The notes under the pieces: model-generated
The model's input: only the letters and a program-made list of their open reading frames with translations
What the model was told of the DNA's origin: nothing
Databases searched by the model: none
IMG/VR virus record: IMGVR_UViG_3300044640_001495
Span: 248,001 to 312,000 of that record
DNA length: 64,000 nt
Direction: 5' to 3' (one strand)
Translations under genes and position numbers: made by a program
Part shown: positions 28,332 to 62,273 of the stretch, in pieces
How positions within the stretch are numbered: the first letter of the stretch is position 1
Layout of the letters: each line of letters begins with the position of its first letter

Positions 28332-28361
28332 AGAGTACGAGCGTGAGCTCGTACTCTCTTT
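28332..28361 (+). terminator. Rho-independent terminator
   Basis: AGAGTACGAGC-GTGA-GCTCGTACTCT, 11-bp stem with GNRA loop, then CTTT. Confidence 0.75.
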
Positions 28362-29907: not shown

Positions 29908-30363
29908 ATGAATTGGTATGACAGGGTTAGCAAAGATATAAGCAACATTCCCGATGCTGTGGCCTATTATGAAGCTGAGTTAATCGAAGCAAAACAAGAT
30001 GTCCGCATAGCGGGAAACATCGAGAAGGCAAGTTCGCAGATGCCCGGCATTGTGGAAGAACGCTTTAATCAACTTCAAGAAATTGAAGGTATCCTTGAGT
30101 ACTTAAACATTGAACTTCGTAGACTTCGCAGTCAACACTTTCGCAAATATCTCGAAAACTACCAACGTCAACTAAGCTCTAGAGACTGTGAAAAGTTTGT
30201 AGAAGGTGAAGCTGACGTGGTAGATTTTGAAAAAATTATCAACGATTTTGCCCTACTTAGAAACAAGTGGTTGGGCATTATTAAAGCACTCGATCAGAAA
30301 CAATGGCATCTCAGCAACATTGTTAAATTACGAGTGTCGGGATTAGAAGACGCATCATTATGA
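29908..30363 (+). CDS. uvsY: recombination mediator UvsY-like
   Basis: Helical; HFRKYLENY, KFVEGE, LGIIKALDQKQWHLSNIVK; follows uvsX. Confidence 0.8.
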   Translation: MNWYDRVSKDISNIPDAVAYYEAELIEAKQDVRIAGNIEKASSQMPGIVEERFNQLQEIEGILEYLNIELRRLRSQHFRKYLENYQRQLSSRDCEKFVEGEADVVDFEKIINDFALLRNKWLGIIKALDQKQWHLSNIVKLRVSGLEDASL

Positions 30364-31325
30364 ACATCTTAGTAACTGGCGGCCAAGGACTTATCGGACA
30401 CAATGTAGTAAGTAAATTAGAAACACAAGGACATAGTGTTGTAGTTGCCGATACTCAAACTAATTATGGAATTATCCCACAGCCAGAACTCGTTTACCTA
30501 TTATCTGAACGTTCTAAAAAAATAAAATCAAGCGAAGTTTATCTTATAGATATATGCGATCCAATTGGCATGAATCAGTTATTTTCAAAATATAATTTTG
30601 ATATTGTAATTCATCTTGCTAGTTTTCCAAGACAAAAAGTAGTTAATGCTAACCCAGCACTTGGCTCACGTACTATGAGTGAAGGACTGCTTAATCTATT
30701 AGAACTAAGTGTAAAGTATAATGTAAAGAGATTTGTTTACACGAGCTCTAGTATGGTCTACGGTGATTTTACAGATTTTGTTAAAGAAGATGCAGTATGC
30801 CGTCCGCAAGGACAATACGGCATTATGAAACTTGCAGGTGAGTGGTTAATTAAAGACTACACACGTAAGTATGGAATAGAACATACAATATTTCGTCCAA
30901 GTGCAGTGTATGGCCCGCTTGATGTTGAAGACCGCGTTATTAGCAAATTTTTGTTAACTGCCATGCGAGGAGGCGTTCTCAAAGTAAACGGCGTTAATGA
31001 AACTCTAGACTTTACCTATGTGGACGATGCGGCCGACGGAATTGTAGCAGCTTCTCTTGCAAAAAATACTGCAAATAAAACTTACAACATAACCAAAAGT
31101 CATAGTAAGACACTGTTGTCTGCTGCTGAATTAGCAGTTAGCCTAGCAGGTAAAGGCACAGTCGAAGTCAAGGAAAAGGATGCGGATTTTCCTAGTCGCG
31201 GTGCATTAGACATTACCGCAGCACGTCGAGATTTTGGGTTTGATCCTAAAGTTGATATCGACGAAGGATTTGAAATATATTATCGCTGGATTAAAAATTC
31301 AGAATACTGGAAGAAAAATTTATGA
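30360..31325 (+). CDS. NAD-dependent nucleotide-sugar epimerase/dehydratase (extended SDR)
   Basis: TGGQGLIG, SSSMVYG, YGIMK (YxxxK), RPSAVYGP, DFTYVDD. Confidence 0.9.
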   Translation: MNILVTGGQGLIGHNVVSKLETQGHSVVVADTQTNYGIIPQPELVYLLSERSKKIKSSEVYLIDICDPIGMNQLFSKYNFDIVIHLASFPRQKVVNANPALGSRTMSEGLLNLLELSVKYNVKRFVYTSSSMVYGDFTDFVKEDAVCRPQGQYGIMKLAGEWLIKDYTRKYGIEHTIFRPSAVYGPLDVEDRVISKFLLTAMRGGVLKVNGVNETLDFTYVDDAADGIVAASLAKNTANKTYNITKSHSKTLLSAAELAVSLAGKGTVEVKEKDADFPSRGALDITAARRDFGFDPKVDIDEGFEIYYRWIKNSEYWKKNL

Positions 31326-32008
31326 TTCCAAAAATAATACATCATGTTTGGCCAGGTGATGATCCTTTTAGAGAAAAGTTTCATGCTTGGAGAGAAAGTT
31401 GGATGCGACTGCACCCAGACTGGACTTTTTATTTTTGGAGAACTTCTAATCTACCTGAAAATATAAATTCTTTGGCAAAACAAATATTGTTAAATCCATC
31501 GTATGCAATCACTCCTAAATCCGATGTACTGAGATTTGAAGTATTACGAATATACGGAGGAATTTATGTCGACACTGATATGGAATGTCTACGTCCGTTT
31601 GACGAATTTTTAAATCTTGATATGTTCACTGGATTTGAAGATGATTATAGAAGAGTATGCCCAAGTTTAATAGGCTGTGTTTCGGATCACCATCTGTTAA
31701 CTGAAATGTCTAACGTTAGTGTTTCTAGAGCAATAAAATATGGACCTGAAGTTTCTAACGAAAGACCTCATGTTATCACTAGCGTAAAACCTTTTACAAA
31801 AATAATGCAAAAATACTTTAATGACGAGGATTTTGCACAAAGAAAAGTTGAAGACGAAAAAGTTAAAATATTTTCTAAAGATTATTTTTACCCTGTATAT
31901 TTTAACGAAAAGCATCGCCTTACCGAAGAAGCTCCAAATTCTTATGCCAAGCACCATTGGACAGGCAACGATCCCGATGGATGGACAAAAAATCCTAAGT
32001 TTCTGTAG
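31322..32008 (+). CDS. glycosyltransferase, GT32/OCH1-like DXD family
   Basis: MIPKIIHHVW, SDVLRFEVLRIYGGIYVDTD, YAKHHWTG. Confidence 0.88.
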   Translation: MIPKIIHHVWPGDDPFREKFHAWRESWMRLHPDWTFYFWRTSNLPENINSLAKQILLNPSYAITPKSDVLRFEVLRIYGGIYVDTDMECLRPFDEFLNLDMFTGFEDDYRRVCPSLIGCVSDHHLLTEMSNVSVSRAIKYGPEVSNERPHVITSVKPFTKIMQKYFNDEDFAQRKVEDEKVKIFSKDYFYPVYFNEKHRLTEEAPNSYAKHHWTGNDPDGWTKNPKFL

Positions 32009-32774
32009 TCCAGTATGGAAATTTAAAAATTACATCGGATACTGGCTTAGGATATTTGTAATCCACATATTGTGTTTCGCATTTGTGATTAATAGCTAAT
32101 TTAGTATCTTGTTTTTTAAGTGCATCGAGTACTTCGTTCGGATCTCGATACTGCGATTCTATACAACTTTCAACTTTACTTTTTATTCGATTGTCGTTGC
32201 CAATCCATGTCCAGTGCCAGCCTACTATATCGGGATGTCTAACACAATGACTTCTATTTTTTTTCTTGTATTGATCACCCTTGTATAATTCTTGAGGAGT
32301 GTTGAACATGCATTTTTTAGCAACAACTGGTCCACTCCATGTCCTGTATAATTTTTGATCAAATTTAAAGATGAACATATCTAACGTGCAATTTACTGGT
32401 TTATTTTCTTTTTCTAATAAATCTAAAATAGACTGTATCTTTTCAGGGTCTAATATTTCATCTAGATCTGAGTGAATTACAGTATCGTTTGCATCACATA
32501 GGTCAATTCCAGATTGCAAAGATGCTCTACTAAAATTTTCGCATTTCCAATCTTTGTAATCGGCCGGAATATCTAAATTTATTAACTGTATTTTGTTATT
32601 GTATTTTTGTTGATATTCGTCTATTCTAGCAGCCAAGTGGTACGGTTTTTCTTTCCCGCTCCATGTCCGATTGCCTTCTAAAATAATCCACTTATCTACA
32701 TAGTTGTTTGAAATGTCTAATCTGATATCTAACATTTCAAACTCGTCGTTAAACATAAAAGTATCAATAATCAT
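31995..32774 (-). CDS. glycosyltransferase, GT17-like (beta-1,4-GlcNAc transferase family)
   Basis: MIIDTFMFNDEFEMLDIRL, ILEGNRTWSG.KP, HSDLDEI, GWHWTW. Confidence 0.8.
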   Translation of the reverse strand: MIIDTFMFNDEFEMLDIRLDISNNYVDKWIILEGNRTWSGKEKPYHLAARIDEYQQKYNNKIQLINLDIPADYKDWKCENFSRASLQSGIDLCDANDTVIHSDLDEILDPEKIQSILDLLEKENKPVNCTLDMFIFKFDQKLYRTWSGPVVAKKCMFNTPQELYKGDQYKKKNRSHCVRHPDIVGWHWTWIGNDNRIKSKVESCIESQYRDPNEVLDALKKQDTKLAINHKCETQYVDYKYPKPVSDVIFKFPYWTTET

Positions 32775-32776
32775 TT

Positions 32777-33412
32777 TTAAAATTTATAAATTACTTGATG
32801 AGCATCATAAATGGGGAATTTATTTTTTTTCTCTAAATATTCTATGATAAGTCTTCCTTTGCCAGTCCGTCTTTTAGAATCTTCAAAGGTTGAATTATCG
32901 TCAATAGCAACAATAGCACCTGGCTTTAAAAATCTTTCTATTTCTAAAAACTCATTGAGATGATGGGTGGCGCTACCCAAGTCGTTGTTCCATTTAACGT
33001 TCATACTATCTAGATAGAATAAATCAACCAAATTTAAATCTGGTTGATCCCTGAGCCACATAACACTGTCTGCACAATAAGATTGATGATATTTTTTATC
33101 TATGTATTGATTGGCTGATTCTACAGCTTCTAAATCAATATCAACCGACCTAACAAATCCACCGTGAAATTTTACAAAATCTGCAAAAATAAAGCCACTG
33201 TTCCCATCCTTCCAATTATTTGGTTTTCTTGTTGATCCAGTTTCTATAATTAAGAAATTATTAGGTTTTATCGAAAGAAGTTCTTTAAAAACAATCTCAA
33301 ATCCGTTGCCTCGGTGATACAATCCTGGCGTTAGTCCTCGTTTAGAAAAGCTAACATTTACGTCTAAATGAGGTTTAAAAATATTTTGATAATGCGAGAT
33401 CCATGTGTTCAT
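32777..33412 (-). CDS. class I SAM-dependent methyltransferase, Methyltransf_24-like
   Basis: IIETGS, SVDID, DLFYLDS, IVAIDDN..GKG. Confidence 0.78.
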   Translation of the reverse strand: MNTWISHYQNIFKPHLDVNVSFSKRGLTPGLYHRGNGFEIVFKELLSIKPNNFLIIETGSTRKPNNWKDGNSGFIFADFVKFHGGFVRSVDIDLEAVESANQYIDKKYHQSYCADSVMWLRDQPDLNLVDLFYLDSMNVKWNNDLGSATHHLNEFLEIERFLKPGAIVAIDDNSTFEDSKRRTGKGRLIIEYLEKKNKFPIYDAHQVIYKF

Positions 33413-33458
33413 ATAGAATATTTAGCATCATTAACTGCTCTGATAAATATTCGATATG
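33410..33458. promoter_or_regulatory. back-to-back late promoters forming an imperfect 17-bp inverted repeat
   Basis: Minus strand GCTAAATA-TTCTAT-ATG and plus strand GATAAATA-TTCGAT-ATG; 15 of 17 positions identical. Confidence 0.75.
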
Positions 33459-34184
33459 AATAAAACGATTTTAATTTCTTCTATCTTCAGAAATTCTGAA
33501 AAAAAGTTAAACCGATATCATGAGCAATTAAAAACTTTAGTTTTAGGATTTCCTGATATTAAATTCCTGCTCTCTATTTACGAAAACGATTCGTCAGACC
33601 ATACTAAAGATATTTTACATTCTTTAGACTGGTCGTTTGTTTCTGAAAAATCTATAATAACAGAAAATATAGGAACTGACTTTTACGGGTCAGTAGTTGA
33701 CGAGCAACGGGTAAAAAATTTAGCAAGCGCAAGAAATAAAACACTCGATGTTGGAGATTTTTTAAATAAATCCAATTATGTTCTTTCAATAGAATCTGAC
33801 ATACAGTACGATTTAGAATGTGCTCAACGAATTATAAATTTTGAATCTGACTACGGAATTGAAGCCGATATTGTATCAGCTGTTAGTTGCAAACCTAGTA
33901 AATATGACAGAAAACGGTTATATGACCTTTGGGGGACTCGAAGAACTCCAGATGAAGAGTGGGGTAGTATTGATAACGGTACAGATTATAAAGAATATTA
34001 TGCTACCTACAACTGTTTTTGTTTTTACAAATCAGAACCAATAAAAAAGGGAGCAAAATTTGGATGGTATAACAATCGATTAAAAAAGTTTGATTGTGAT
34101 ACAATGGTCATTTGTGAAAATTTTAGAGACATCGGCCATAACAAAATTTATATAAATCACCTTGCCAATTGCTGGCATATTTAA
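33456..34184 (+). CDS. GT-A fold glycosyltransferase-like protein
   Basis: SIFRNSE, SIYENDSSD, LASARNK, IESD, LYDLWG.R, FDCDTMVICENF. Confidence 0.65.
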   Translation: MNKTILISSIFRNSEKKLNRYHEQLKTLVLGFPDIKFLLSIYENDSSDHTKDILHSLDWSFVSEKSIITENIGTDFYGSVVDEQRVKNLASARNKTLDVGDFLNKSNYVLSIESDIQYDLECAQRIINFESDYGIEADIVSAVSCKPSKYDRKRLYDLWGTRRTPDEEWGSIDNGTDYKEYYATYNCFCFYKSEPIKKGAKFGWYNNRLKKFDCDTMVICENFRDIGHNKIYINHLANCWHI

Positions 34185-34186
34185 CT

Positions 34187-35359
34187 ATGAAAAAATACAC
34201 CTGGCCCTTAATGAAAGACACAATAACATTTTTAGATAAACTAAAAATGATAAATTTTATTCTTAGATCAAATAAATTTACAAACGGTAATCAAGTCAAA
34301 CAATTTGAAAAAGAATGGAGTGAATGGTTGAATGTAGACCACAGTCTTTTTGTATCGTCTGGTAGTACTGCCAATTTATTACTACTGTCTGCTGTAAAAG
34401 AAAAGTTCGGATTAAAAGATCAAGACAAAATTGTTGTGCCTGCCTGCACTTGGGTCACAAACATATCCCCAGTTATACAATGCGGACTACAACCTATTTT
34501 TTGTGATATTAATTTTGAAAACTACAGTTTTGATCTTGACCACCTTAAAAAAATCTCGTTAGAGCATCCAGATATAAAAGGAATATTTGTAACTCACTTG
34601 TTGGGGTTTGATGCAAACATAGAAAAAATTAAAGAAATAATTCCCAGTGCGTTGATCTTAGAAGATGTATGCGAATCACACGGTGTTACAGATAGCATTG
34701 GGAATAAAAGAGGATCTTCTTCTTTAGGAGCTACATTTAGTTTTTATTTCGGACATCATATGACAACCATAGAAGGCGGCATGGTGTCTACGACTAACGA
34801 AGAGCTGCATGAACTAATGAGGCTGAAAAGAAGTCACGGATTAGCTAGAGAAGGTTCTCCTGCGTATTTTGAAAAATATAAAAAAGAATATCCAGATTTG
34901 CCTCCAAGTTTTCTTTTTTTAACAGAGGGCTACAATTTTAGAAATCATGAAATTCCAGCAGTATTAGGGCAAAGTCAACTAAAACGACTAACCAATATGG
35001 TAGATATTCGAAAAAACAACTTTATAAAATATTTTAATATAATAAAGAATTACGAAGATAAGTTTTACCTTCCGGAATTTAATGATACAAATAGTAGTTT
35101 TGCATTCCCGTTTGTGTCCAAATCTAAAAACACACACCTGCATCTTATTGAGGCTTTCACGAAATTCAATATCGAACATCGTCCAATAGTTAGCGGAAAT
35201 TTACTCGCCCATCCATTTTTAAAAGAATATAAGTTAGAGCCCGGGAGTAAAAATAATGTTAATCTTTTACACAATAATGGAGTGTATATTGGCAATAATC
35301 ATTTTGTAAATCAACAAGATTTCGATGTATTAACTATAATTTTAGAGAGTATAAAATGA
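34187..35359 (+). CDS. PLP-dependent sugar enzyme of the DegT fold, ColD-like GDP-4-keto-6-deoxymannose 3-dehydratase
   Basis: SSGSTANL, LEDVCESHG, SFYFGHHMTTIEGG (His at the usual Schiff-base Lys), RPIVSGN; start ATG 34187. Confidence 0.8.
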   Translation: MKKYTWPLMKDTITFLDKLKMINFILRSNKFTNGNQVKQFEKEWSEWLNVDHSLFVSSGSTANLLLLSAVKEKFGLKDQDKIVVPACTWVTNISPVIQCGLQPIFCDINFENYSFDLDHLKKISLEHPDIKGIFVTHLLGFDANIEKIKEIIPSALILEDVCESHGVTDSIGNKRGSSSLGATFSFYFGHHMTTIEGGMVSTTNEELHELMRLKRSHGLAREGSPAYFEKYKKEYPDLPPSFLFLTEGYNFRNHEIPAVLGQSQLKRLTNMVDIRKNNFIKYFNIIKNYEDKFYLPEFNDTNSSFAFPFVSKSKNTHLHLIEAFTKFNIEHRPIVSGNLLAHPFLKEYKLEPGSKNNVNLLHNNGVYIGNNHFVNQQDFDVLTIILESIK

Positions 35360-36123
35360 AAACAATAGTAATTGCAACAGGTGGTTTTGACCCTATTCAT
35401 TCAGGTCATATTAACTATATCAAAGAGGCTAAAAAATTAGGCGATGTTTTAATCATAGGAGCAAACTCCGATGCCTGGTTGCGCCGCAAGAAAGGGCAAG
35501 AGTTTATGCCATGGGACGAACGTGCTAGTATTCTAAGTGCTATCAAAGATGTAGATCGTGTTATTAACTTTGACGACGCAGACGGTAGTGCAAAAGACGC
35601 TATTAGAAAAGTAAGATCAATATACCCCAACGATAAAATTGTATTCGCCAACGGCGGTGATCGTACTAAAACTAATATTCCTGAAATGGATGTACTAGAC
35701 GAAATGTTGCATTTAGAATTTGTTTTTGGTGTAGGCGGTGAACACAAAATGAATTCCAGTTCGTGGATATTACAAGAATGGAAAGCGCCTAAGACTGAAC
35801 GACAGTGGGGCTACTATCGTGTACTGCATGAAGTTCCTGGAATGAAAGTTAAAGAGCTCACTGTGGAGCCCGGAAAGAGCCTAAGTATGCAACGCCACCA
35901 ACTACGTGCTGAGTATTGGATGGTTAGTGAAGGCCAGTGTATAGTTAACAGCATGATGCCTAACGGGTATCGATTGCTACCTGCAGAATTAATTAAGCAC
36001 CAAGAATATAAAATTCCGGTTGCCGAGTGGCATCAATTAACAAACCCTTATGATGTACCTTGCAAGATTGTCGAAATACAATACGGGCAAAGCTGTATTG
36101 AAGAGGACATTGAAAGAGTATGA
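35356..36123 (+). CDS. cytidylyltransferase-like (HIGH) domain fused to a mannose-6-phosphate-isomerase-type cupin
   Basis: GGFDPIHSGH, ANGGDR; then ERQWGYYRVL, VEPGKSLSMQRH..RAEYW, EIQYG..EEDIER. Confidence 0.85.
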   Translation: MKTIVIATGGFDPIHSGHINYIKEAKKLGDVLIIGANSDAWLRRKKGQEFMPWDERASILSAIKDVDRVINFDDADGSAKDAIRKVRSIYPNDKIVFANGGDRTKTNIPEMDVLDEMLHLEFVFGVGGEHKMNSSSWILQEWKAPKTERQWGYYRVLHEVPGMKVKELTVEPGKSLSMQRHQLRAEYWMVSEGQCIVNSMMPNGYRLLPAELIKHQEYKIPVAEWHQLTNPYDVPCKIVEIQYGQSCIEEDIERV

Positions 36124-36923
36124 ACAATTGGATCTTTCTCAGCAAGGGCGGCGAAGACGAATATATCAATTCCTTTGCTATAGGCAGTGGCGGTAGAGTA
36201 ATCAATTCTGATGATTTTAATTATGACGACAGTGAAGATCCAATTGTTTTACGCGGAATCCTAAAACATAAAATAATGAAACGCTGTTGGTTTGAAGGCA
36301 GAGATTTTTATTTTATGGACACCGGATACATGGGCAATCAACGAGGTCCGTTGAATCCCATGGGCTGGAAGTTTTGGCACCGTATTGTAAAAAATGATCT
36401 GCAACATGATCAAGTAATTCACCGACCGCCTGATAGATTCAAGAAGCTGGCCATTCCAGTACATCGCTGGAAAAAAGGCGGTAGAAAAATACTTATTGCC
36501 AAACCTGATGAAAAACCCATGAAGTTCTACAATCTAGAACTAGAGCAATGGTTAGAAGAAACCATTGCAACTATTAAGCAATATACTGATCGTCCTATTG
36601 AAGTTAGAGAACGTGTAAAAAGTCGCACTGATAGAATGATCACTAACTCACTCAAAGAAGCTCTAGACGAAGATGTTCATGCGCTAGTGACATTTAACAG
36701 CAACGCTGCCACTGAAGCAGTGTTGTATGGATATCCTGCTTTCACTCTATGCTCAACACACGCAGCTAAATCTGTAACTGAACAAGATCTCAGCAAGATT
36801 GAAACACCATATTATCCCGATCTACAACAAGTTGAAGCGTGGGCACATCATTTGGCCTACTGTCAATTTCATGTCAGTGAACTTAAAGACGGCTCAGCCT
36901 GGAGAATGTTAAATGAACAATGA
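36120..36923 (+). CDS. GT-B / capsule-synthesis (KpsS/KpsC-like) glycosyltransferase, paralogue 1
   Basis: FMDTGY, KILIA, IEVRER, VTFNSNAATEAVLYGYP. Confidence 0.6.
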   Translation: MNNWIFLSKGGEDEYINSFAIGSGGRVINSDDFNYDDSEDPIVLRGILKHKIMKRCWFEGRDFYFMDTGYMGNQRGPLNPMGWKFWHRIVKNDLQHDQVIHRPPDRFKKLAIPVHRWKKGGRKILIAKPDEKPMKFYNLELEQWLEETIATIKQYTDRPIEVRERVKSRTDRMITNSLKEALDEDVHALVTFNSNAATEAVLYGYPAFTLCSTHAAKSVTEQDLSKIETPYYPDLQQVEAWAHHLAYCQFHVSELKDGSAWRMLNEQ

Positions 36924-38376
36924 TTTTTTACCCGTATACATCGGTTATGACAGCAGAGAAGACATAGCGTATCGAGTCTGTGAATATTCCATATATAAAA
37001 ATTCTTCTACGGCCGAGGTTAAATCTCTTAATCAGTCTAAACTTCGTAGAGATGGTTTATATTCTAGAGATGTTGATCAATTGGGATCAACAGAATTTAC
37101 TTTTACAAGATTTCTTGTTCCAACACTGACTAATTTCCAAGGATGGGCCTTGTTTTGCGACTGTGATTTTGTATGGGACGGTGATATTCAAGAAGTTTTT
37201 AAACAGGCAGATCCAAAATTTGCTGTGATGGTTGTCAAGCACGATCATGTGCCAACCAATACAACAAAAATGGACGGAAAAACACAGACACAATATCCTC
37301 GAAAAAATTGGAGTTCGATGATACTTTGGAACTGCGAGCATCCCAGCAACCAGCGGTTGACCATAGATGATGTCAACACCAAAGATGGTGCTTATCTACA
37401 TAGATTTCAATGGTTGCAAGATAATGAAATTGGAGAACTGCAAACAAAATTTAATTTTCTAGTAGGATGGAACAAGGAATCTGCTACCGGAAAACCGTTG
37501 GCCTATCACTGGACCGAAGGTGGTCCTTGGTTTGAAAATTATAGAACCTGCGAATATGCTGATGTTTGGTGGAAGTATCTTATAGACTACGCCAATGAAA
37601 TAGGCAGAAATAATACGCAGGTATATGCACCTATTACCTGGGTGACTAGTCTATCTAGAGAGTATTATAATTATGCAGCCAATTTAACACTACCGTCGTG
37701 GGATAAATTGCCCGGAGATGTAGTTTTTGTTTGGGATGACAAGCCGGTGGATCTAGGTTTTGGCAAAGTCTATAATTTTTGGAAAGATGTAGCAAGTCCA
37801 GAAGACCCCTGGATAAAAGAAGGTATGGGCGGTAGCAAAGCTGATAGATTCTGGAAGAAGAGTCGTACACAAGTATGGGCTGCTAGAAAATTTCGAGGGC
37901 TGGTGGTGTGGATAGATGCTGATATAATGGTAGAAAAAGAGTTGTCACGAGCCAAGGCCATGGAAATTTTACATCCAGGCAACAATATCTGGGCAACACT
38001 AGACACTGGGTCAGATTGGCCGCACAAAGACGATTGCCCCATAGACACCGGTATAGTGGCATTTGATACAAAGAATCCAGAATTTAATAATTTTATTAGA
38101 GACTATTCTATGACCTGGTACAACGGCGATATTTTTAAATTGCCGCAGCCATACGATCATCATGCAGCAAATTATGTGAGACGAAAATGGCCCATGTCAA
38201 CATATTGTCCACACTACAACAATTGGTTAACTATTCCTCAAGGCCATATCAGTAGATTTGCCATGGAAAACAGCAGACTGAAAGATTATTTTACACACTA
38301 TCTTGGTATAGATAGAAAAGAACTGTTAAACAACAACAGTACCAAGAAAGAAAAGAAAGATAAAGGCACCAAGTGA
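36913..38376 (+). CDS. two-domain GT-A glycosyltransferase fusion
   Basis: N-domain YIGYDSRE, STEFTFTRFLVP, FCDCD, KNWSSMILWN, HWTEGGPW; C-domain VVWIDAD, IDTGIV, YD. Confidence 0.78.
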   Translation: MNNDFLPVYIGYDSREDIAYRVCEYSIYKNSSTAEVKSLNQSKLRRDGLYSRDVDQLGSTEFTFTRFLVPTLTNFQGWALFCDCDFVWDGDIQEVFKQADPKFAVMVVKHDHVPTNTTKMDGKTQTQYPRKNWSSMILWNCEHPSNQRLTIDDVNTKDGAYLHRFQWLQDNEIGELQTKFNFLVGWNKESATGKPLAYHWTEGGPWFENYRTCEYADVWWKYLIDYANEIGRNNTQVYAPITWVTSLSREYYNYAANLTLPSWDKLPGDVVFVWDDKPVDLGFGKVYNFWKDVASPEDPWIKEGMGGSKADRFWKKSRTQVWAARKFRGLVVWIDADIMVEKELSRAKAMEILHPGNNIWATLDTGSDWPHKDDCPIDTGIVAFDTKNPEFNNFIRDYSMTWYNGDIFKLPQPYDHHAANYVRRKWPMSTYCPHYNNWLTIPQGHISRFAMENSRLKDYFTHYLGIDRKELLNNNSTKKEKKDKGTK

Positions 38377-39308
38377 AATTTGTTTCCTATCTGGCCTGTT
38401 TACCGCCTAACAATAAAAATGTAGAGAAAGGCGAGATCCTTGATCGATACGCTATGGGAGTAGCCTACATGGGTGATCAAGTTATAGCCCATACTCAACG
38501 AACATTAGTAGACGCAGACGTGGCCATGATGATAGGTTGGGTACATGAAAATTCCAAAGAAAGTTCTCATTTGGATTTTCGCAAGCAGATTATCGATTAT
38601 CAAAGAGCCAAAGGCAAACGAGTGTTGCTTGCAGACAGCAATTTATTTCTTTATAAAAACACAGCCAACCCATTGCACTACTTGAGATACAGCTATGATG
38701 GAATATTTCCCAATACTGGTAATTACTGTGACAAAGAAATTGATCCTGCCCGCTGGAAAAAATTATCTACAGATCTAGGTATCAATCTTAGAGATTATAG
38801 ATCAAACGGCAATCATATTCTATTATGCCTTCAAAGAAATGGCGGGTGGAGCATGGGTGGCTACGATGTTATTGACTGGACAGCAAAAACAATCAAAGAA
38901 CTACGCAAACATTCTACGAGAGACATCGTTATTCGTGCGCATCCAGGAGACAAAGGAGCCAAGGGATATCTAAGTCCCAACAACCTCATTAAAAAAATAG
39001 GCATGTTGAAAGGAGTGAGATTATCCAGAGATGGACACTCGTTGGAACATGATTTAAAAAATTGTTGGGCAGTGGTCAATCATAATTCCAGTCCTACTGT
39101 GGGTGCTGCCATTGAAGGGTTTCCTATTTTTGTTACAGACCCTACAAGAAGTCAATGCGCAGAAATTGCCAACACTGATCTAGCCCAAATCGAAAATCCC
39201 AACCTTCCGGACAGACAAACTTGGGCAGAAAGACTGGCCATGTTTCATTGGAACTTTGCCGAAATTGAAAGCGGCGAGTGTTGGGCACATATGAGAAAAT
39301 ACGTATGA
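38373..39308 (+). CDS. GT-B / capsule-synthesis-like glycosyltransferase, paralogue 2
   Basis: HILLCLQR, IVIRAHP, VVNHNSSPTVGAAIEGFP; GTG start. Confidence 0.6.
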   Translation: MKFVSYLACLPPNNKNVEKGEILDRYAMGVAYMGDQVIAHTQRTLVDADVAMMIGWVHENSKESSHLDFRKQIIDYQRAKGKRVLLADSNLFLYKNTANPLHYLRYSYDGIFPNTGNYCDKEIDPARWKKLSTDLGINLRDYRSNGNHILLCLQRNGGWSMGGYDVIDWTAKTIKELRKHSTRDIVIRAHPGDKGAKGYLSPNNLIKKIGMLKGVRLSRDGHSLEHDLKNCWAVVNHNSSPTVGAAIEGFPIFVTDPTRSQCAEIANTDLAQIENPNLPDRQTWAERLAMFHWNFAEIESGECWAHMRKYV

Positions 39309-40018
39309 ACATAGAAATTATAACAAGTTTTAATCAAAGGTATTATGATCTTATAGGTAAAGATTGTGTTGAAACATGGCTCAAATACTGGCCAAAAGAA
39401 TTGACATTGACATGTTATGTAGAAGAATTTTATTTGCCGGAACATCCTAGATTGAAACAGATATCGTTTGACGATTTTAAATCTGAGTATTATGAATTTC
39501 AGACCACTGCTGAGAAACAGGTTAAAAAGTTTGCAAAAAAAGCATTTAGTTTTATCCATGCTATGGAAAACTCAACAGCAGATAGAATTGTTTGGGTAGA
39601 TGCTGATGTGTTATCAGTGAAAGAGTTGCCAATGGATTTATTATTGGAAGTACTACCCAATGAGGTACTTAGCACTCATATGGGAGTGACATACTTTGCG
39701 GCTAAAGATGGAAGTCCCGGTAGGTGGTTCGTTCCAGAGACTGGATTCTTTGCAGTTAATACTCGTCATCCGCAGTTTAAAGAATTTGCCAGTGAATACA
39801 AAAGACATTACGTAGAACGCGACAACACCATGTTGAGAAGATTTTATGACAACGATGTCTATGGATATGTTTTTGAGAAATTAAAAGCCCCGGGAAATGA
39901 TCTTTGCAAAGATTTCACCAAGGGCTATAAGACACCGTTGCGTCATACTGTGCTTGGACCTTACATTGAACACTACAAGGCCAAACATTCTAAACACGAA
40001 TTTAGCCTGGAGAACTGA
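39305..40018 (+). CDS. GT-A glycosyltransferase-like protein (start ATG 39305)
   Basis: FAKKAFS, VWVDAD, ETGFF, FYDNDVY, EHYKAK. Confidence 0.65.
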   Translation: MNIEIITSFNQRYYDLIGKDCVETWLKYWPKELTLTCYVEEFYLPEHPRLKQISFDDFKSEYYEFQTTAEKQVKKFAKKAFSFIHAMENSTADRIVWVDADVLSVKELPMDLLLEVLPNEVLSTHMGVTYFAAKDGSPGRWFVPETGFFAVNTRHPQFKEFASEYKRHYVERDNTMLRRFYDNDVYGYVFEKLKAPGNDLCKDFTKGYKTPLRHTVLGPYIEHYKAKHSKHEFSLEN

Positions 40019-40826
40019 TCCAGTATTTTTCGTGGCGATTTACAATTAAATCACTCTTTGCGCTCTTACCGTAGTCTTTGCGTTTGCCCTTAAGGTGATC
40101 AAGGTATGCACCCCATGCACTATTGATTAAAGGATGGCCTTCACCTTTGAATAAACCTGCACTCCAGTCATACCATTGCCATTCTGGATGACGTTGTTTG
40201 ACTTCTTTCCTAACAATGTCAAAAACCCAACAGTCGTTCCACTCACTCATGGTAAACAGTCTGCCAGTGTCGTAGGCTTTTTGAAATTCAACAAGAAACT
40301 CTTGAGTGTTTTTGTCCTGCAAGTTCATGGAATACAAGCCGCATTCTGTAAACTTTTTCTCTCTACCTAAAAACCCTAGACCAATGTTAGAAGCAGCCAT
40401 TTTATCTATAAAGTGATGGGGAACAGGTGTATGACACACCATATCAGCATCCATCCAAAATAGTACATCGGCATCACAGTTTGCGGCAGCGTGGCACACT
40501 GAATAAATTTTATGGCTAAACCGGATAGCGTCCCAGCGGAATCCCACTCCAGGTGCTTTGCCTTTTCGATCAACAGGTCCAGTGGCTACAAGACCATTGG
40601 CCCTGGGGTCATTTTTCCACTTTTCTTTAAATGCTACTAGTGCAGGCACAGTGGCATGTAAATCTCTAACCACTAGATTAGGGGCAGACTCGGTTATTTC
40701 ACAGTCTTCTGGGTAGACATACAATGTAATATCTGATGGCCATGTTTTTAAAAATGTTTCAATCATTTTTCGGCCATATTTTTCATAACCAGCCTTGTGA
40801 AATGTAGTGACTACTGCTTTTTTCAT
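40002..40826 (-). CDS. GT-A glycosyltransferase-like protein (start ATG 40826, coupled to the gmd stop)
   Basis: WDAIRFSHK, FWMDAD, ECGLY, EWNDCWVFD, DHLKGKRK; paralogous to 39305-40018. Confidence 0.7.
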   Translation of the reverse strand: MKKAVVTTFHKAGYEKYGRKMIETFLKTWPSDITLYVYPEDCEITESAPNLVVRDLHATVPALVAFKEKWKNDPRANGLVATGPVDRKGKAPGVGFRWDAIRFSHKIYSVCHAAANCDADVLFWMDADMVCHTPVPHHFIDKMAASNIGLGFLGREKKFTECGLYSMNLQDKNTQEFLVEFQKAYDTGRLFTMSEWNDCWVFDIVRKEVKQRHPEWQWYDWSAGLFKGEGHPLINSAWGAYLDHLKGKRKDYGKSAKSDLIVNRHEKYWISSPG

Positions 40827-41836
40827 CTTGTTTGTAATGTCCAATCTGCACCTTGGTTGCCACCATATCGTTTAATGTCGGCGTCGACCATCATTTTAAC
40901 AAGAGCGTCAAAATCAGTCTTACGCTGCCAACCTAGCACTGATTCTGCCTTGGTAGGATTACCACATAGGCTGTGTAATTCAGCAGGACGTACAAATGCT
41001 GGATTAGTTTCAATATAATTTTGCCAATTGTCAATGCCAGCATACTTAAATGCACGTTCTAACAAATCGCCAATGGTATATTGCACACCTGTGGCGATCA
41101 CATAGTCGCCTGGCTCGGGCTGTTGCAACATCAACCACATGGCTTCCACAAAATCTCCGGCAAACCCCCAATCACGTTTGGCATCTAAATTTCCTAAGAC
41201 AATTTTATCTTGAAGGCCAAGTTTAATACGAGCAACACCGTCTGTGATTTTACGTGTGACAAATTCTTTGCCTCTAATAGGACTTTCATGATTAAACAAA
41301 ATACCGTTTGATGCATGTAGGCTATAACTTTCACGGAAGTTTACAGTCATCCAGTATGCATACAACTTAGCAACACCGTAAGGACTACGTGGCCAAAACG
41401 GAGTTTTTTCGTCTTGTTTTCCACCTGAAATTTCAATACTGTTGCCAAACATTTCACTAGTACTAGCTTGGTAATATTTGGTATCTGGACTATGTTGTTT
41501 GACAGCGTTAAGAATATTTAAAACTCCAACAGCATTGACCTCAGTGGTCATTTTATTAAGATCCCAACTGGCTCCGACAAAACTTTGAGCAGCAAGGTTA
41601 TAAAATTCGTTTGGTCTTAAACTCTTTACCAAATGATTCATACAACCGTCGTCTGTAATATCACCGGTAATTAACTCAATGTCGTTTTCAATTCCTAAGA
41701 ATTTGATATTATCCAAATTTGGATTTGAATATCGTTTGACCAGTCCGTAGACCTTGTAGTCTTTTTCTAAAAGTAGTTTGGCAAGGTAAGGACCATCTTG
41801 TCCTGTCATGCCTGTGACAAATGCAATTTTTTTCAT
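40823..41836 (-). CDS. gmd: GDP-mannose 4,6-dehydratase
   Basis: TGMTGQDG.YLA, NLAAQSFV, YQASTSEMFG, PRSPYGVAK, FNHES..RG..FVTRKI, LGNLDAKRDWG. Confidence 0.95.
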   Translation of the reverse strand: MKKIAFVTGMTGQDGPYLAKLLLEKDYKVYGLVKRYSNPNLDNIKFLGIENDIELITGDITDDGCMNHLVKSLRPNEFYNLAAQSFVGASWDLNKMTTEVNAVGVLNILNAVKQHSPDTKYYQASTSEMFGNSIEISGGKQDEKTPFWPRSPYGVAKLYAYWMTVNFRESYSLHASNGILFNHESPIRGKEFVTRKITDGVARIKLGLQDKIVLGNLDAKRDWGFAGDFVEAMWLMLQQPEPGDYVIATGVQYTIGDLLERAFKYAGIDNWQNYIETNPAFVRPAELHSLCGNPTKAESVLGWQRKTDFDALVKMMVDADIKRYGGNQGADWTLQTR

Positions 41837-41890
41837 ATTTTTCCTAGTTTCGATAAGGTGAATTATTTATGAGATATTTTCAATGCTAGG

Positions 41891-42283
41891 TTATTTCTTC
41901 CACACGTAGTAATTTTTAGCAACTTCTCTAATAGCGTAGTGATCTGATTTCAATAATTTTTGACATTCTTTAGATATCAGTTCAGGTCCTTCAATTATGA
42001 TCGTGGGCTGTGTTCGGCGCCATATCTGCTGAAGTTCAGGTATAAATTCTTCATGTACAAAATCAATAATTATTAAATCCACATCAGACACCAAATGGAT
42101 ATTATCGAAATTTTCTCTGTATACCACATTTCTTTTTTGAATACGTGGTAGTGTGCCATTGACCACAAATACCGTGTCAAAGGTTTCTAACAGATCCTCT
42201 AGATTACCCAACGCCGTGCCTACAGCCAGCACATTTCGTGCTTTACGGTGAGCCTTCTTCATTCGTTTTGAAAATTTTGTCAT
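41891..42283 (-). CDS. hypothetical protein, possibly a truncated Rossmann fold
   Basis: Protein-like composition; same strand as and upstream of gmd. Confidence 0.55.
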   Translation of the reverse strand: MTKFSKRMKKAHRKARNVLAVGTALGNLEDLLETFDTVFVVNGTLPRIQKRNVVYRENFDNIHLVSDVDLIIIDFVHEEFIPELQQIWRRTQPTIIIEGPELISKECQKLLKSDHYAIREVAKNYYVWKK

Positions 42284-42319
42284 AGATATTGATTAAATAC
42301 ACATATATTTATTTGACTG

Positions 42320-43159
42320 ATGAGATTCAAAATTCATAAAACCCACGGAGCTCTTAACAGTGCTCCAATATTTGCAGCCTTGGAACAAGGTATCAAAAAT
42401 ACCGGTTTTTCGGTGGTAGATTCGGGTCAAGACGTGGATGTGATTTGGTCAGTGTTATGGCATGGTCGCATGCAGGCCAATCAACTCATCTACAATCAAT
42501 GCCGAGCAAAAAGAAAACCAGTGATGATCATTGAGGTGGGCAATCTCATCCGAGGCACCACTTGGCGTATCAGTTTAGACCACATCCATGGCCTGGGAAT
42601 TTTTGGAAATAGTGAAAATCTTGATCAAGCACGACCAAAAATTCTAGGCGTGGATTTGAAACCCGTTGACGATAATAGAAATAATAAAATTTTAATTGCT
42701 TGTCAACATGAGCGTAGTCTTCAGTGGGAAGGGCAATCATCCATGGCGGAATGGGTGAAACAAAAAGTGGCAGAAATTAGAAAATTCACTGATAAATCTG
42801 TGGTAGTGAGACCGCATCCGCGATCGCCGGTAAGTTTGAATATTCAAGGAGTCACAGTTGAGCAGCCAAAAAAAATTCCAAATAGCTATGATTCATTTGA
42901 TATCAATTACAAATATCACTGCGTGATAAATCACAACAGCGGTCCTGCTGTGCAAGCGGCGATCAGTGGAATTCCTGTGATCTGCGACCACACAAGTTTG
43001 GCATTTGACGTCAGCGATGTCATTGAAAATATCAATAGGCCAATCTTGCCAGACAGAACACAATGGTTTGTGAAACTGTGTCATACCGAATGGACAGTGC
43101 AAGAAATATCCACAGGGATTCCAATACAACGCCTTGTTGCCGCATTAAAAAATTATTGA
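42320..43159 (+). CDS. GT-B / capsule-synthesis-like glycosyltransferase, paralogue 3
   Basis: IIEVG, ILIACQH, VVRPHP, VINHNSGPAVQAAISGIP. Confidence 0.6.
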   Translation: MRFKIHKTHGALNSAPIFAALEQGIKNTGFSVVDSGQDVDVIWSVLWHGRMQANQLIYNQCRAKRKPVMIIEVGNLIRGTTWRISLDHIHGLGIFGNSENLDQARPKILGVDLKPVDDNRNNKILIACQHERSLQWEGQSSMAEWVKQKVAEIRKFTDKSVVVRPHPRSPVSLNIQGVTVEQPKKIPNSYDSFDINYKYHCVINHNSGPAVQAAISGIPVICDHTSLAFDVSDVIENINRPILPDRTQWFVKLCHTEWTVQEISTGIPIQRLVAALKNY

Positions 43160-43166
43160 AAAATCA

Positions 43167-43195
43167 TTGACTTTTGTTAAGAAATACAGTATAGT
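43167..43195 (+). promoter_or_regulatory. sigma70-type promoter TTGACT-N17-TATAGT, 6 nt before the ATG
   Basis: Exact spacing read from the sequence; no SD. Confidence 0.75.
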
Positions 43196-43201
43196 ATTAG
43201 T

Positions 43202-62247: not shown

Positions 62248-62273
62248 TTAGTGTCCTTTGTGTGTATGTAGTA

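What the first reader, a model, noticed from the sequence alone, without database searches (positions are those of the whole stretch)
30360..43159. 13-kb late-expressed glycan-building island between uvsY and uvsW
Seen: 14 contiguous ORFs, comprising Gmd, a ColD-like enzyme, an SDR epimerase, a nucleotidyltransferase-cupin, a methyltransferase, GT32, GT17-like, four further GT-A ORFs (five domains), three GT-B/capsule-type paralogues and one unknown. Internal promoters are late-type (33419, 33442, 42294). Inference: the phage makes its own activated sugars and a complex oligosaccharide late in infection. That timing fits virion glycosylation (as in giant eukaryotic viruses) or host-surface remodelling better than replication-coupled DNA glucosylation. 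Complete phage-encoded glycan pathways of this size are poorly characterised.
Basis: partly seen in the sequence, partly recalled or inferred. Interest (0 to 1): 0.68.

Follow-up and report, generated by a model that had tools for sequence, protein, structure and literature searches.

The report
Late glycan-building island, jumbo phage
A 353-kb lake-water phage carries a 13-kb, strain-variable block of 15 sugar-making and sugar-transferring genes, mostly behind late-type promoters, that probably decorates the virus particle (or else the host surface) with a rare-sugar glycan. Phage clusters of this kind are already described, but none has been tested.

Summary
Window 30360-43159 is a gap-free block of 15 ORFs (not 14). 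It holds Gmd, a ColD-type 3-dehydratase, an epimerase-type SDR, a fused nucleotidyltransferase-cupin, a weak methyltransferase-like ORF, one small unknown and 10 glycosyltransferase ORFs (11 domains).

Folding resolved the unannotated ORFs:
- Three paralogues have the KpsC/WbbB beta-Kdo-transferase fold.
- Three domains are a DxD GT-A family seen mainly in viruses.

All five gap-preceded genes carry the NTAAATA motif. This motif heads the phage's virion operons and is proposed as the late promoter in the relatives CBB and GAP32. A gp55-like sigma gene is present. The first two genes (SDR, GT32) instead ride on the uvsX-uvsY unit.

In 80 uncultivated relatives the uvsY-helicase slot is hypervariable. 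It is empty in some and holds a conserved core in most. The Gmd/ColD/GT32/GT17 modules are sporadic and low in GC.

The genome has no ThyA-family hydroxymethylase or C5 DNA methylase, and a TET search found nothing (its control did not ring), so DNA glycosylation is unlikely. No island protein has a membrane helix or export function.

The acceptor is not shown. Virion proteins are my favoured guess and host envelope the main rival. Comparable clusters are described in cyanomyoviruses, so this is a new member of a known, functionally untested kind.

The parts
29908..30363 (+). uvsY-like recombination mediator (left flank, backbone)
   Evidence: phrog_231 E 1e-16. 81-99% identical in the closer relatives.
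30360..31325 (+). g1: extended SDR, nucleotide-sugar epimerase type. Start overlaps the uvsY stop; no late motif.
   Evidence: PF01370 156 bits. phrog_540 nucleotide-sugar epimerase. Best PDB matches are a UDP-glucose 4-epimerase and a dTDP-glucose 4,6-dehydratase. GxxGxxG, SSS..YG and YxxxK signatures.
31322..32008 (+). g2: GT32-type glycosyltransferase with a DxD motif
   Evidence: PF04488 51.3 bits against cut-off 23. DTD at residues 84-86. No homologue in 80 relatives.
31995..32774 (-). g3: GT17-like glycosyltransferase
   Evidence: PF04724 52.2 bits against cut-off 26, profile positions 75-225 of 348. Homologues in three relatives.
32777..33412 (-). g4: methyltransferase-like protein (weak call)
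   Evidence: Methyltransf_24 at 18.5 bits, below cut-off; two of three homologues scanned hit the same region. phrog_24975.
33419..33425 (-). late-type promoter motif CTAAATA, 6 nt before the g4 start
33443..33449 (+). late-type promoter motif ATAAATA, 6 nt before the g5 start; heads the g5-g11 unit
   Evidence: In 25 of 33 relatives scanned a TAAATA motif lies close to the g7 start; in most of these it is the same motif, 5 nt before the g7 ATG.
33456..34184 (+). g5: CAP59/Anp1-type GT-A glycosyltransferase
   Evidence: PF11735 38.9 bits against cut-off 28.8. A g5-like gene follows Gmd-ColD in three MAGs.
34169..35359 (+). g6: ColD-type PMP-dependent 3-dehydratase (true start may be the ATG at 34187)
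   Evidence: E 2e-54 to 2GMS. His aligned with ColD His188, the residue changed in the mutant entry 3B8X. RfbH is the best NCBIfam match.
35356..36123 (+). g7: HIGH-motif nucleotidyltransferase (RfaE-II/TagD type) fused to a PMI-type cupin; first gene of the conserved core
   Evidence: PF01467 and PF01050. TIGR02199 E 2e-21. phrog_7878. PDB matches are cytidylyl/adenylyltransferases. HxGH, GGDR and the cupin H181, E186, H226 are conserved in 29 homologues.
36120..36923 (+). g8: family A, KpsC/WbbB-fold glycosyltransferase; subfamily without the Q and HP motifs
36913..38376 (+). g9: two-domain GT-A glycosyltransferase (N: GT8-like, C: family B)
   Evidence: AF2 pLDDT 82.7. Foldseek matches LARGE1, GlyE, R699, XXYLT1 and PBCV-1 A64R. 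phrog_28018.
38373..39308 (+). g10: family A, KpsC/WbbB-fold glycosyltransferase with Q and HP motifs
   Evidence: AF2 pLDDT 93.3. Foldseek E 5e-8 to KpsC. VIA Z 13.9.
39278..40018 (+). g11: family B DxD GT-A (likely start 39305)
40002..40844 (-). g12: family B DxD GT-A (likely start 40826)
   Evidence: Atlas: nearest clusters are all viral, close to Nucleotid_trans/GT8.
40823..41836 (-). g13: GDP-mannose 4,6-dehydratase
   Evidence: PF16363 390.8 bits; TIGR01472 407.9 bits.
41864..41870 (-). late-type motif ATAAATA, 27 nt before the Gmd start
41891..42283 (-). g14: 130-aa core protein, unknown; faint Rossmann/methyltransferase-like signal
   Evidence: No family in the window copy. Two homologues hit Spermine_synth at E 0.003-0.009.
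42306..42312 (-). late-type motif ATAAATA, 22 nt before the g14 start
   Evidence: Kept in relatives.
42293..42299 (+). late-type motif TTAAATA, 20 nt before the g15 start
   Evidence: Kept in 6 of 8 relatives.
42320..43159 (+). g15: family A, KpsC/WbbB-fold glycosyltransferase with Q and HP motifs
43202..44398 (+). g16: fast-evolving 398-aa gene of unknown function behind a near-consensus sigma70 promoter (43167-43195); not a glycan gene
44385..45839 (+). SF2 DNA helicase in the uvsW position (right flank, backbone)
   Evidence: ResIII/DEAD/Helicase_C. phrog_16.

Best explanation
The block is a strain-variable glycan-assembly island in a recombination-prone slot (uvsY to helicase) of an uncultivated lake jumbo myovirus of the Rak2/GAP32/CBB kind. 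It has two layers.

**Conserved core.** This comprises g7 (nucleotidyltransferase-cupin), a GT8-like domain, two to five KpsC-fold transferases, DxD GT-A transferases and the 130-aa g14.

**Swappable accessory cassettes.** Here these are an epimerase-type SDR, GT32, GT17-like plus a methyltransferase-like ORF, CAP59-type GT plus ColD, and Gmd.

**Shown**
- The gene families and folds.
- The paralogy.
- The late-type motif at every unit start.
- The variability among relatives.
- The lack of membrane or export parts.

**Inferred**
- Gmd and ColD turn host GDP-mannose into GDP-4-keto-3,6-dideoxymannose. This is then reduced, by g1 or a host enzyme, to a colitose-like 3,6-dideoxyhexose. The adjacent CAP59-type GT probably transfers it.
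- g7 makes a second, manno-configured NDP-sugar (mannose or heptose type).
- The KpsC-fold enzymes, which keep the Gln and His-Pro donor motifs, use a CMP- or NMP-linked acidic sugar.
- The 11 GT domains build a partly methylated hetero-oligosaccharide in the cytoplasm, late in infection, on a phage-specified acceptor. Most likely this acceptor is virion proteins, giving each strain its own particle 'serotype'.
For: **Families and folds:**

**Late control**
- ATAAATA is 12-fold enriched upstream of genes.
- Of 11 motif-bearing genes with a PHROG category, 8 are virion or tail genes.
- The motif heads the baseplate and head operons, and a gp55-like sigma gene is present.
- The same motif is proposed as the late promoter for CBB and GAP32.
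- In the island, 5 of 5 gap-preceded genes carry it, against 31% genome-wide.
- It is conserved before g7, g14 and g15 in relatives.

**Cassette nature**
- Relatives with 98-99% identical UvsX have island genes only 32-71% identical and lack g1-g6.
- Others have an empty slot.
- The g2-g6 block is 31-35% GC against 41% for the genome.

**Module logic:** Gmd-ColD, and in three MAGs Gmd-ColD-g5-like GT, are neighbours in cellular genomes.

**Acceptor**
- No TM helix in any of the 15 proteins.
- The nearest Atlas clusters of families A and B are almost all viral.
- Family A clusters lie beside the terminase and portal genes in a podovirus, and between a tail protein and the lysis cassette in CcrColossus.
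- The GT-A domains resemble protein- or glycoprotein-directed enzymes, including the PBCV-1 capsid glycosyltransferase.

**Against DNA as acceptor:**
Against: - No glycan, transcript start or acceptor has been observed.
- Timing rests on a motif that also precedes a few metabolic genes (RNR, radical SAM).
- The island sits in the recombination module, not the structural one.
- g1 and g2 lack the motif.
- KpsC and WbbB themselves act on lipid-linked acceptors of the cell envelope. Soluble GTs are also normal for O-antigen synthesis, so lack of TM segments does not exclude a host-surface product.
- A scan for Ser/Thr-rich acceptor tracts in the phage's proteins found nothing distinctive.
- A 260-kb relative lacks the system, so it is dispensable.
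- The 4-keto reduction step is unassigned, and g7's substrate is a guess.
Confidence: 0.5

Rival explanations
1. Host-envelope remodelling. The enzymes extend or cap host lipid-linked intermediates (LPS core/O-antigen, capsule linker). The host's own flippases and transporters then export the product. This would change the infected cell's surface to block superinfection or to stop progeny sticking to debris. It is the function usually proposed for such phage clusters.
For: - The closest solved folds for family A (KpsC, WbbB, KrkA) all work on envelope glycolipids.
- Gmd-ColD is an O-antigen pathway, and its bacterial homologues lie in surface-glycan loci.
- The literature interprets cyanophage and jumbo-phage clusters this way.
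- Hypervariability is what a surface antigen under selection would show.
Against: - There is no initiating phosphoglycosyltransferase, flippase, polymerase, ligase or ABC transporter, and no membrane helix in the island.
- Exclusion functions are expected early, yet 13 of 15 genes sit behind late-type motifs.
- Families A and B have almost only viral neighbours in the Atlas rather than bacterial envelope-locus relatives.
Confidence: 0.28
2. Another cytoplasmic acceptor. The glycan would go on a non-structural phage or host protein, a lipid, or a soluble molecule, for example as a decoy or anti-defence product. Alternatively the cluster makes a sugar-derived metabolite.
For: - All proteins are soluble.
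- The system is dispensable and swaps like accessory or anti-defence cargo.
- It sits beside a fast-evolving early gene, g16.
- Iyer et al. consider secondary-metabolite roles for some phage sugar clusters.
Against: - Eleven GT domains argue for a sizeable oligosaccharide rather than a small metabolite.
- There are no tailoring enzymes typical of natural-product clusters.
- Nothing points to a specific alternative acceptor.
Confidence: 0.15
3. DNA hypermodification. The transferases would glycosylate modified bases of phage DNA, as in T-even phages.
For: - The island lies in the replication/recombination module next to uvsX/uvsY. From memory, T4 beta-gt also lies next to uvsX.
- Family A is GT-B-like, as are the T4 glucosyltransferases.
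Against: - No ThyA-family dCMP/dUMP hydroxymethylase; ThyX is present instead.
- No C5 DNA methylase.
- No TET/JBP match, though that search's control did not ring.
- Late-type rather than early promoters.
- The cultured relative CBB was reported to lack hydroxymethylcytosine glycosylation genes.
Confidence: 0.03

Closest known systems
'LPS / cell-wall modification' gene clusters of large T4-like cyanophages (P-SSM2, S-SCSM1, S-SCSM2R), as surveyed for jumbo phages by Iyer et al. 2021 (PMC7824862; also PMC1079782, PMC9602691, PMC12801897)
   Same: - Many paralogous glycosyltransferases of several families.
- NAD-dependent epimerase/dehydratases including Gmd.
- HIGH-type nucleotidyltransferase and cupin sugar isomerase.
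- Methyltransferases.
- Sporadic and polymorphic between related phages.
- Function never tested.
   Different: - The lineage is a lake jumbo phage of the Rak2/GAP32/CBB kind, not a cyanophage.
- It has a ColD 3-deoxygenation branch.
- It has three KpsC-fold paralogues.
- The nucleotidyltransferase and cupin are fused.
- It occupies a fixed uvsY-helicase slot.
- A late-type motif sits at every unit start, which argues against the usual 'superinfection exclusion' reading.
Virion glycosylation of mycobacteriophages (Freeman et al. 2023; known to me only through citations in PMC12619734 and PMC12801897, and from memory)
   Same: Phage-encoded glycosyltransferases act in the cytoplasm on capsid and tail proteins at the time of virion assembly.
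   Different: - There, a few GTs lie inside the structural operon and use host sugar nucleotides.
- Here, there are 11 GT domains plus sugar-nucleotide enzymes in the recombination module.
- The acceptor here is not identified.
Glycosylation machinery of giant viruses (PBCV-1 A64R, mimivirus R699, Tetraselmis virus 1 'capsule biosynthesis' proteins)
   Same: - The virus encodes Gmd-type enzymes and its own GTs.
- The g9 domains match A64R and R699.
- Family A's best structural relatives among viral models include four TetV-1 proteins, TM 0.66-0.74.
   Different: - Those are eukaryotic viruses, and their glycans are attached to capsid or fibrils.
- No sequence-level orthology has been shown.
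Bacterial GDP-colitose pathway (Gmd, ColD, ColC) of O-antigen loci
   Same: Gmd plus a ColD homologue with the diagnostic His in place of the PLP lysine. Gmd-ColD adjacency in cellular genomes.
   Different: - No ColC/Fcl orthologue and no ManB/ManC.
- Gmd and ColD sit 5.5 kb apart on opposite strands.
- No Wzx/Wzy.
Retaining beta-Kdo transferases KpsC/KpsS (GT107), WbbB (GT99), KrkA
   Same: - Overall fold: Foldseek E 5e-8; VIA Z 12.7-13.9, about 3 units above generic GT-B.
- Gln and His-Pro motifs with the same spacing in g10 and g15.
   Different: - By motif register, the position of the absolutely conserved Asp nucleophile is Gly, Ser or Pro.
- The g8 subfamily lacks the Gln and His-Pro motifs.
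- These are short single-domain soluble proteins in a family with almost only viral neighbours.

Membership tests
GDP-mannose 4,6-dehydratase (Gmd) | Full-length match to the Gmd-specific models | tested here: met
   PF16363 390.8 bits over 1-332 of 332. TIGR01472 407.9 bits over 1-341 of 342, just under the equivalog cut-off of 415.
ColD (GDP-4-keto-6-deoxymannose 3-dehydratase) | His in place of the Schiff-base Lys of DegT aminotransferases | tested here: met
   The query His-His aligns with ColD His188-His189. The first His is the residue changed in the mutant entry 3B8X.
ColD (GDP-4-keto-6-deoxymannose 3-dehydratase) | Acts on the GDP-linked sugar made by Gmd | not testable with these tools
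   Only indirect support: Gmd is in the island, and Gmd-ColD are adjacent in 20+ cellular loci.
Complete GDP-colitose pathway | ColC (Fcl-like 5-epimerase/4-reductase) present | tested here: not met
   g1 scores 56 bits against the Fcl model (cut-off 500). It is 23% identical to the SDRs directly beside bacterial Gmd-ColD (21-30% across all ColD loci). It occurs in relatives without Gmd/ColD.
Retaining beta-Kdo glycosyltransferases (GT99/GT107) | Modified GT-B fold of KpsC/WbbB | tested here: met
   Model pLDDT 93. The top hits in two independent searches are KpsC, WbbB and KrkA.
Retaining beta-Kdo glycosyltransferases (GT99/GT107) | Absolutely conserved His of the HP motif (WbbB His265), and Gln228 | tested here: inconclusive
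   Present in the g10 and g15 subfamilies with Q-to-H spacing of 36 (37 in WbbB). Absent in the g8 subfamily.
Retaining beta-Kdo glycosyltransferases (GT99/GT107) | Absolutely conserved Asp nucleophile (WbbB Asp232, Q+4) | tested here: not met
   Q+4 is Gly (g10), Ser (g15) or Pro (g8) by motif register. This is by sequence register only; no residue-level superposition was possible.
GT8-like retaining GT-A (g9 N domain) | GT-A fold with a DxD motif and a family-level sequence match | tested here: inconclusive
   Fold matches GlyE, XXYLT1, LgtC and a GT8 structure. DxD is conserved. Pfam GT8 scores only 17.9 bits against a cut-off of 24.3.
GT32 | Gly_transf_sug domain with a DxD motif | tested here: met
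   51.3 bits against cut-off 23; DTD at residues 84-86.
T4-type late transcription unit | AT-rich -10-only promoter related to TATAAATA, at heads of virion operons | tested here: met
   The literature reports the same for CBB and GAP32.
T4-type late transcription unit | gp55-like late sigma factor encoded | tested here: met
   40% identity, E 2e-52 to CBB gp244, at genome 203594-204460. gp33 was not searched for.
T4-type late transcription unit | Transcripts start at the motif late in infection | not testable with these tools
   Only contigs from lake metatranscriptomes were available. They cover g7-g10 and show neither 5' ends nor timing.
T-even type DNA glycosylation | Pathway to a hydroxymethylated base (dCMP/dUMP hydroxymethylase, or C5 methylase plus TET) | tested here: not met
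   No PF00303 and no PF00145 (controls rang). No PF12851 (control silent). ThyX is present.
Phage 'capsular/LPS modification' clusters (Iyer et al. 2021) | Epimerase/dehydratase paralogues, cupin isomerase, HIGH nucleotidyltransferase and several GT families in one polymorphic cluster | tested here: met
Virion glycosylation systems | Glycan demonstrably attached to virion proteins | not testable with these tools
   No isolate and no proteome. A Ser/Thr-tract scan was uninformative.

The most novel reading that the evidence does not exclude
The slot is a phage 'serotype locus'. On this reading, a viral glycosylation toolkit coats the virions of an abundant lake jumbo-phage lineage with strain-specific glycans containing a 3,6-dideoxyhexose. 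The toolkit is built around a KpsC-fold transferase family shared with giant algal viruses and a fused isomerase-nucleotidyltransferase. It would be expressed from leaderless late promoters and reshuffled by cassette exchange. This would be the tailed-phage counterpart of bacterial O-antigen diversity and the first such system for phages of Gram-negative-type hosts.
Probability: 0.35. Interest if true: 0.75.

Novelty: new member of a known kind. Interest (0 to 1): 0.52.

Why it matters
- Large phages repeatedly carry glycan clusters whose purpose has been guessed at since 2005 but never measured.
- This island offers an unusually clean test case. It has a fixed genomic slot and natural island-plus and island-minus relatives. 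Promoter logic ties 13 genes to the virion programme. A defined rare-sugar branch (Gmd plus ColD) would give a mass-spectrometric signature.
- If the glycan is on the particle, phage surfaces in lakes would carry strain-specific sugar coats. That would bear on adsorption, grazing, host lectin-type defences and particle stability.
- It would also assign a function to a family of about 2,900 unannotated metagenomic protein clusters.
- If the glycan is on the host, it would show late-stage envelope editing by a lytic phage.

Tried and rejected
- **Megablast of the island against 50,697 phage records:** no match. Cultured relatives share only backbone genes.
- **Profile searches of families A and B against PDB sequences:** nothing. 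Folding was needed.
- **PADLOC:** not run. Nothing suggested a defence system.
- **ColC role for g1:** rejected as orthology.
- **'TibC heptosyltransferase' label in podovirus MW202713:** it would have linked family A/B clusters to protein glycosylation, but Pfam did not reproduce it. I do not use it.
- **Bacterial donor for the low-GC ColD block:** the best cellular match is 58% (a 1.6-kb Chitinophagia MAG contig), then about 50% across many phyla. No donor can be named.
- **Sigma70-type promoters inside the island:** not above shuffled expectation (77 found against 63 +/- 8.5).
- **Ser/Thr-rich acceptor tracts in phage proteins:** nothing distinctive.
- **Metatranscriptome contigs:** they show RNA-library coverage of g7-g10 only. 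Most are 90-99% alike, so partly from relatives. They cannot show strand, starts or timing, and DNA carry-over is possible.
- **Complex prediction:** not used. No specific binding claim is made.

Full report
**Setting**

The window is bases 248001-312000 of a 353,123-bp virus record, 98% complete by CheckV. Its UvsX is 61-68% identical to those of the jumbo myoviruses Atu_ph07, Vibrio 2.275.O, XaC1, CBB and GAP32. The major capsid protein is 65% identical to that of CBB. The island DNA has no megablast match in 50,697 phage records. Fifteen lake-water metagenome runs hold the exact sequence. This is an uncultivated freshwater member of the Rak2/GAP32/CBB kind of phage.

**The observation**

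ORFs tile 30360-43159 without gaps. Family scans confirm the following:
- an extended SDR (g1)
- GT32 with DxD (g2)
- a GT17-like protein (g3)
- a CAP59/Anp1-type GT-A (g5)
- a DegT-family enzyme (g6)
- a cytidylyltransferase-like domain fused to a mannose-6-phosphate-isomerase-type cupin (g7)
- Gmd (g13)

The methyltransferase call for g4 is weak. Methyltransf_24 scores below cut-off, though two of three homologues scanned hit the same region.

g6 matches the ColD crystal structures at E 2e-54. It keeps the histidine that replaces the PLP lysine in ColD, which is the residue changed in the H188 mutant entry. It is therefore a 3-dehydratase, not an aminotransferase.

The flanks are a UvsY-like mediator and an SF2 DNA helicase. 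Upstream lie a gp32-like SSB and UvsX.

**The unannotated ORFs**

All-against-all BLAST splits six of them into two paralogous families. Family A is g8, g10 and g15. Family B is g11, g12 and the C-terminal half of g9.

*Family A*
- An alignment of 36 members from this phage and its relatives gave an AlphaFold model of g10 with mean pLDDT 93.
- Foldseek against the PDB puts retaining beta-Kdo transferases (KpsC, WbbB, KrkA) in the first 25 places, with best E 5e-8.
- An independent all-against-representatives search gives the same four proteins at Z 12.7-13.9. Generic GT-B enzymes follow at 10.5 and below.
- The g10 and g15 subfamilies keep a Gln and a His-Pro motif with the spacing seen in WbbB. 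By that register, the position of the absolutely conserved Asp nucleophile is Gly or Ser. The g8 subfamily lacks both motifs.
- So these proteins share the fold and probably the CMP-sugar-type donor site. They fail a defining feature of the retaining Kdo transferases.

*g9 and family B*
- g9 folds as two GT-A domains (pLDDT 83).
- It resembles LARGE1, the GT8 enzyme GlyE, mimivirus R699, XXYLT1 and the PBCV-1 capsid glycosyltransferase A64R.
- Family B has an invariant DxD motif.

*Distribution*
- The nearest Atlas clusters of both families are almost entirely viral.
- Family A has about 2,900 unannotated relatives in metagenomes.
- Its best matches among viral models include four Tetraselmis virus 1 proteins and Caulobacter phage CcrColossus gp128.
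- In this genome both families occur only in the island.

In total there are 10 transferase ORFs with 11 domains.

**Sugar-nucleotide chemistry**

Gmd plus ColD is the first half of the colitose route. In cellular genomes the ColD homologue usually lies next to a Gmd. In three MAGs a g5-like transferase follows directly. This suggests g5 uses the product.

The third enzyme, ColC, is missing. g1 has an epimerase-type Ser/Tyr/Lys signature. Its best matches are a UDP-glucose 4-epimerase structure and dTDP-glucose 4,6-dehydratases. It is only 21-30% identical to SDR genes in the flanks of bacterial ColD loci, and 23% to those directly beside Gmd-ColD. It also occurs in relatives that lack Gmd and ColD. 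The reduction step is therefore unassigned.

g7's N-terminal domain is closest to RfaE domain II, TagD and ethanolamine-phosphate cytidylyltransferase. In 29 homologues the HxGH and GGDR motifs and a His-Glu-His set in the cupin are invariant or nearly so. Both halves are probably active.

My inference, not a result: g7 pairs an aldose-ketose isomerase with the nucleotidyl transfer step for a manno-configured sugar (mannose or heptose type). The host would supply the kinase or mutase.

**Timing**

- ATAAATA is the second most enriched 7-mer upstream of genes, after a ribosome-binding-site word, at 44 observed against 3.6 expected. NTAAATA lies within 60 nt of 85 of 464 starts.
- Of 20 motif-bearing genes scanned, 11 have a PHROG category. 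Eight of those are virion, baseplate, spike or fibre genes; the others are RNR, a radical SAM protein and a phosphoesterase.
- The motif heads the baseplate operon, and lies upstream of the genes that lead to the prohead protease and major capsid genes.
- The genome encodes a homologue of the gp55-like late sigma of CBB (E 2e-52).
- Buttimer et al. proposed the same ATAAATA motif as the late promoter of CBB and GAP32 (PMC5259590).
- Sigma70-like promoters cluster elsewhere, at 310-340 kb among short genes.
- In the island every gene preceded by a gap has the motif: g4, g5, g13, g14 and g15. That is 5 of 5 against 31% of such genes genome-wide.
- The next gene, g16, instead has a near-consensus sigma70 promoter.
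- In 25 of 33 relatives scanned a TAAATA motif lies close to the g7 start. In most of these it sits 5 nt before the g7 ATG, and those before g14 and g15 are kept too. In this phage the g5-g6 cassette sits between that promoter and g7.
- g1 and g2 have no such motif. g1 overlaps the uvsY stop codon.

Thirteen of 15 genes are thus tied to the late programme by sequence logic. No transcript ends are known. Contigs from four lake metatranscriptomes cover g7-g10 but not g5-g6. They cannot show starts, strand or timing.

**Variability**

Eighty IMG/VR loci were fetched through UvsX and compared.
- Nine relatives have uvsY followed within about 1.2-3 kb by the helicase. A g16-like gene was detected between them in five of these, and there is no island.
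- A 260-kb relative has no family A gene anywhere.
- Most others carry the core: g7, the GT8-like domain, two to five family A genes, g12, g14, g15 and g16.
- Gmd appears in two relatives and g3/g4 in four. g2, g5 and g6 appear in none.
- Relatives with UvsX 98-99% identical have island genes only 32-71% identical. One with UvsX 87% has g1 and g7 at 91-92%.
- The g2-g6 block is 31-35% GC against 41% for the genome.

This is cassette exchange in a hot spot, as at bacterial O-antigen loci.

**What is glycosylated?**

*DNA is unlikely.* There is no ThyA-family hydroxymethylase and no C5 DNA methylase, and ThyX is present. A TET/JBP search found nothing, but its control did not ring either.

*Virion or envelope: the evidence is circumstantial.*
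- No island protein has a hydrophobic segment typical of a membrane helix.
- No initiating transferase, flippase, polymerase, ligase or transporter is present.
- Families A and B have viral rather than bacterial envelope-locus relatives.
- In a 42.7-kb podovirus, family A and B genes lie just upstream of the terminase and portal genes.
- In CcrColossus, the family A gene lies between a 1,665-aa tail protein and the lysis cassette, with a GT9 protein.
- Pelagibacter phage Mosig has both families alongside methyltransferases and a sulfotransferase.

These points, with the late motifs, tilt me towards virion proteins as the acceptor.

Against this, KpsC and WbbB act on envelope glycolipids, and soluble transferases are normal in O-antigen synthesis. 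The island is not in the structural module, and I found no obvious acceptor tract.

**What is known**

- Sullivan et al. (PMC1079782) noted LPS gene clusters in P-SSM2.
- Iyer et al. (PMC7824862) describe the same component set in jumbo phages: epimerase/dehydratase paralogues, cupin isomerases, HIGH nucleotidyltransferases and at least eight GT families, all polymorphic between relatives. They read it as capsule or O-antigen modification.
- S-SCSM1 and S-SCSM2R carry Gmd-based and Kdo-based sets with up to 13 transferases.
- I found no paper on a phage ColD or a phage KpsC-fold family.

**Verdict**

The feature is real and was read well. It is a new member of a known, functionally untested kind. 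Its useful extras are the late-motif control, a fixed hypervariable slot with natural presence/absence variants, a ColD branch, and a large KpsC-fold family seen mainly in viruses.

My confidence is high that it is a glycan-building island behind late-type promoters. It is about even that the target is the virion.

Noticed in passing
whole genome; in the window e.g. 33419-33425(-), 33443-33449(+), and before the genes at 13136, 19114, 21523, 23086 and 55064: The late-type motif often ends only 0-9 nt before the start codon (28 of 102 instances; a second mode lies at 15-35 nt).
   Followed up: partly
window 43167-44398: g16 is a 398-aa acidic protein with no family match, behind a near-consensus sigma70 promoter (TTGACT, 17 nt, TATAGT). 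It is only 36-49% identical in relatives whose flanking uvsX and helicase are 84-97% identical, and 20-24% identical in island-less relatives. It is a fast-evolving early gene at the edge of the variable slot.
   Followed up: partly
L024-L034 and others, just upstream of the g7 homologue (e.g. L026:3470-3489): In many relatives the late motif before g7 lies inside a 16-nt near-palindrome (GCAGATAAATATCTGC) that ends at the ATG. It may be an operator or RNA hairpin, or just a lineage-specific accident.
   Followed up: no
window 31322-35359: The accessory block g2-g6 has 31-35% GC against 41% for the genome, and g2, g5 and g6 have no counterpart in 80 relatives. It looks recently acquired. The best cellular ColD match is 58% (a short Chitinophagia MAG contig), and no donor can be named.
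   Followed up: partly
L180 (Caulobacter phage CcrColossus 98832-103385); L022 (Pelagibacter phage Mosig 124832-130666); L023 (podovirus MW202713): Small clusters holding family A, in Mosig and the podovirus together with family B, occur in unrelated phages. In CcrColossus the cluster lies between a tail protein and the lysis cassette, with GT9 and an MptE-like protein. In Mosig it lies with two methyltransferases, GT8 and a sulfotransferase. In the podovirus it lies next to terminase and portal with a DegT aminotransferase, and there the family A and B ORFs are unannotated.
   Followed up: partly
window 28332-28357: A strong terminator-like hairpin (11 pairs, 6 G-C) follows the gp32-like SSB gene. 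No recognisable promoter lies between it and the uvsX-uvsY-g1-g2 unit, so how that unit is transcribed is unclear.
   Followed up: no
genome 310-340 kb (window 62000-64000 is its edge): Sigma70-like promoters cluster in a region of short genes (mean 108-139 aa). This is the likely early region, as described for CBB.
   Followed up: no
window 35356-39399: Contigs from four freshwater metatranscriptome libraries lie on g7-g10 and none on g5-g6. Most are 90-99% alike, so many come from relatives that carry the core but not this accessory cassette.
   Followed up: partly
genome 91526-92107: The phage encodes ThyX (flavin-dependent thymidylate synthase) and no ThyA-family enzyme.
   Followed up: yes
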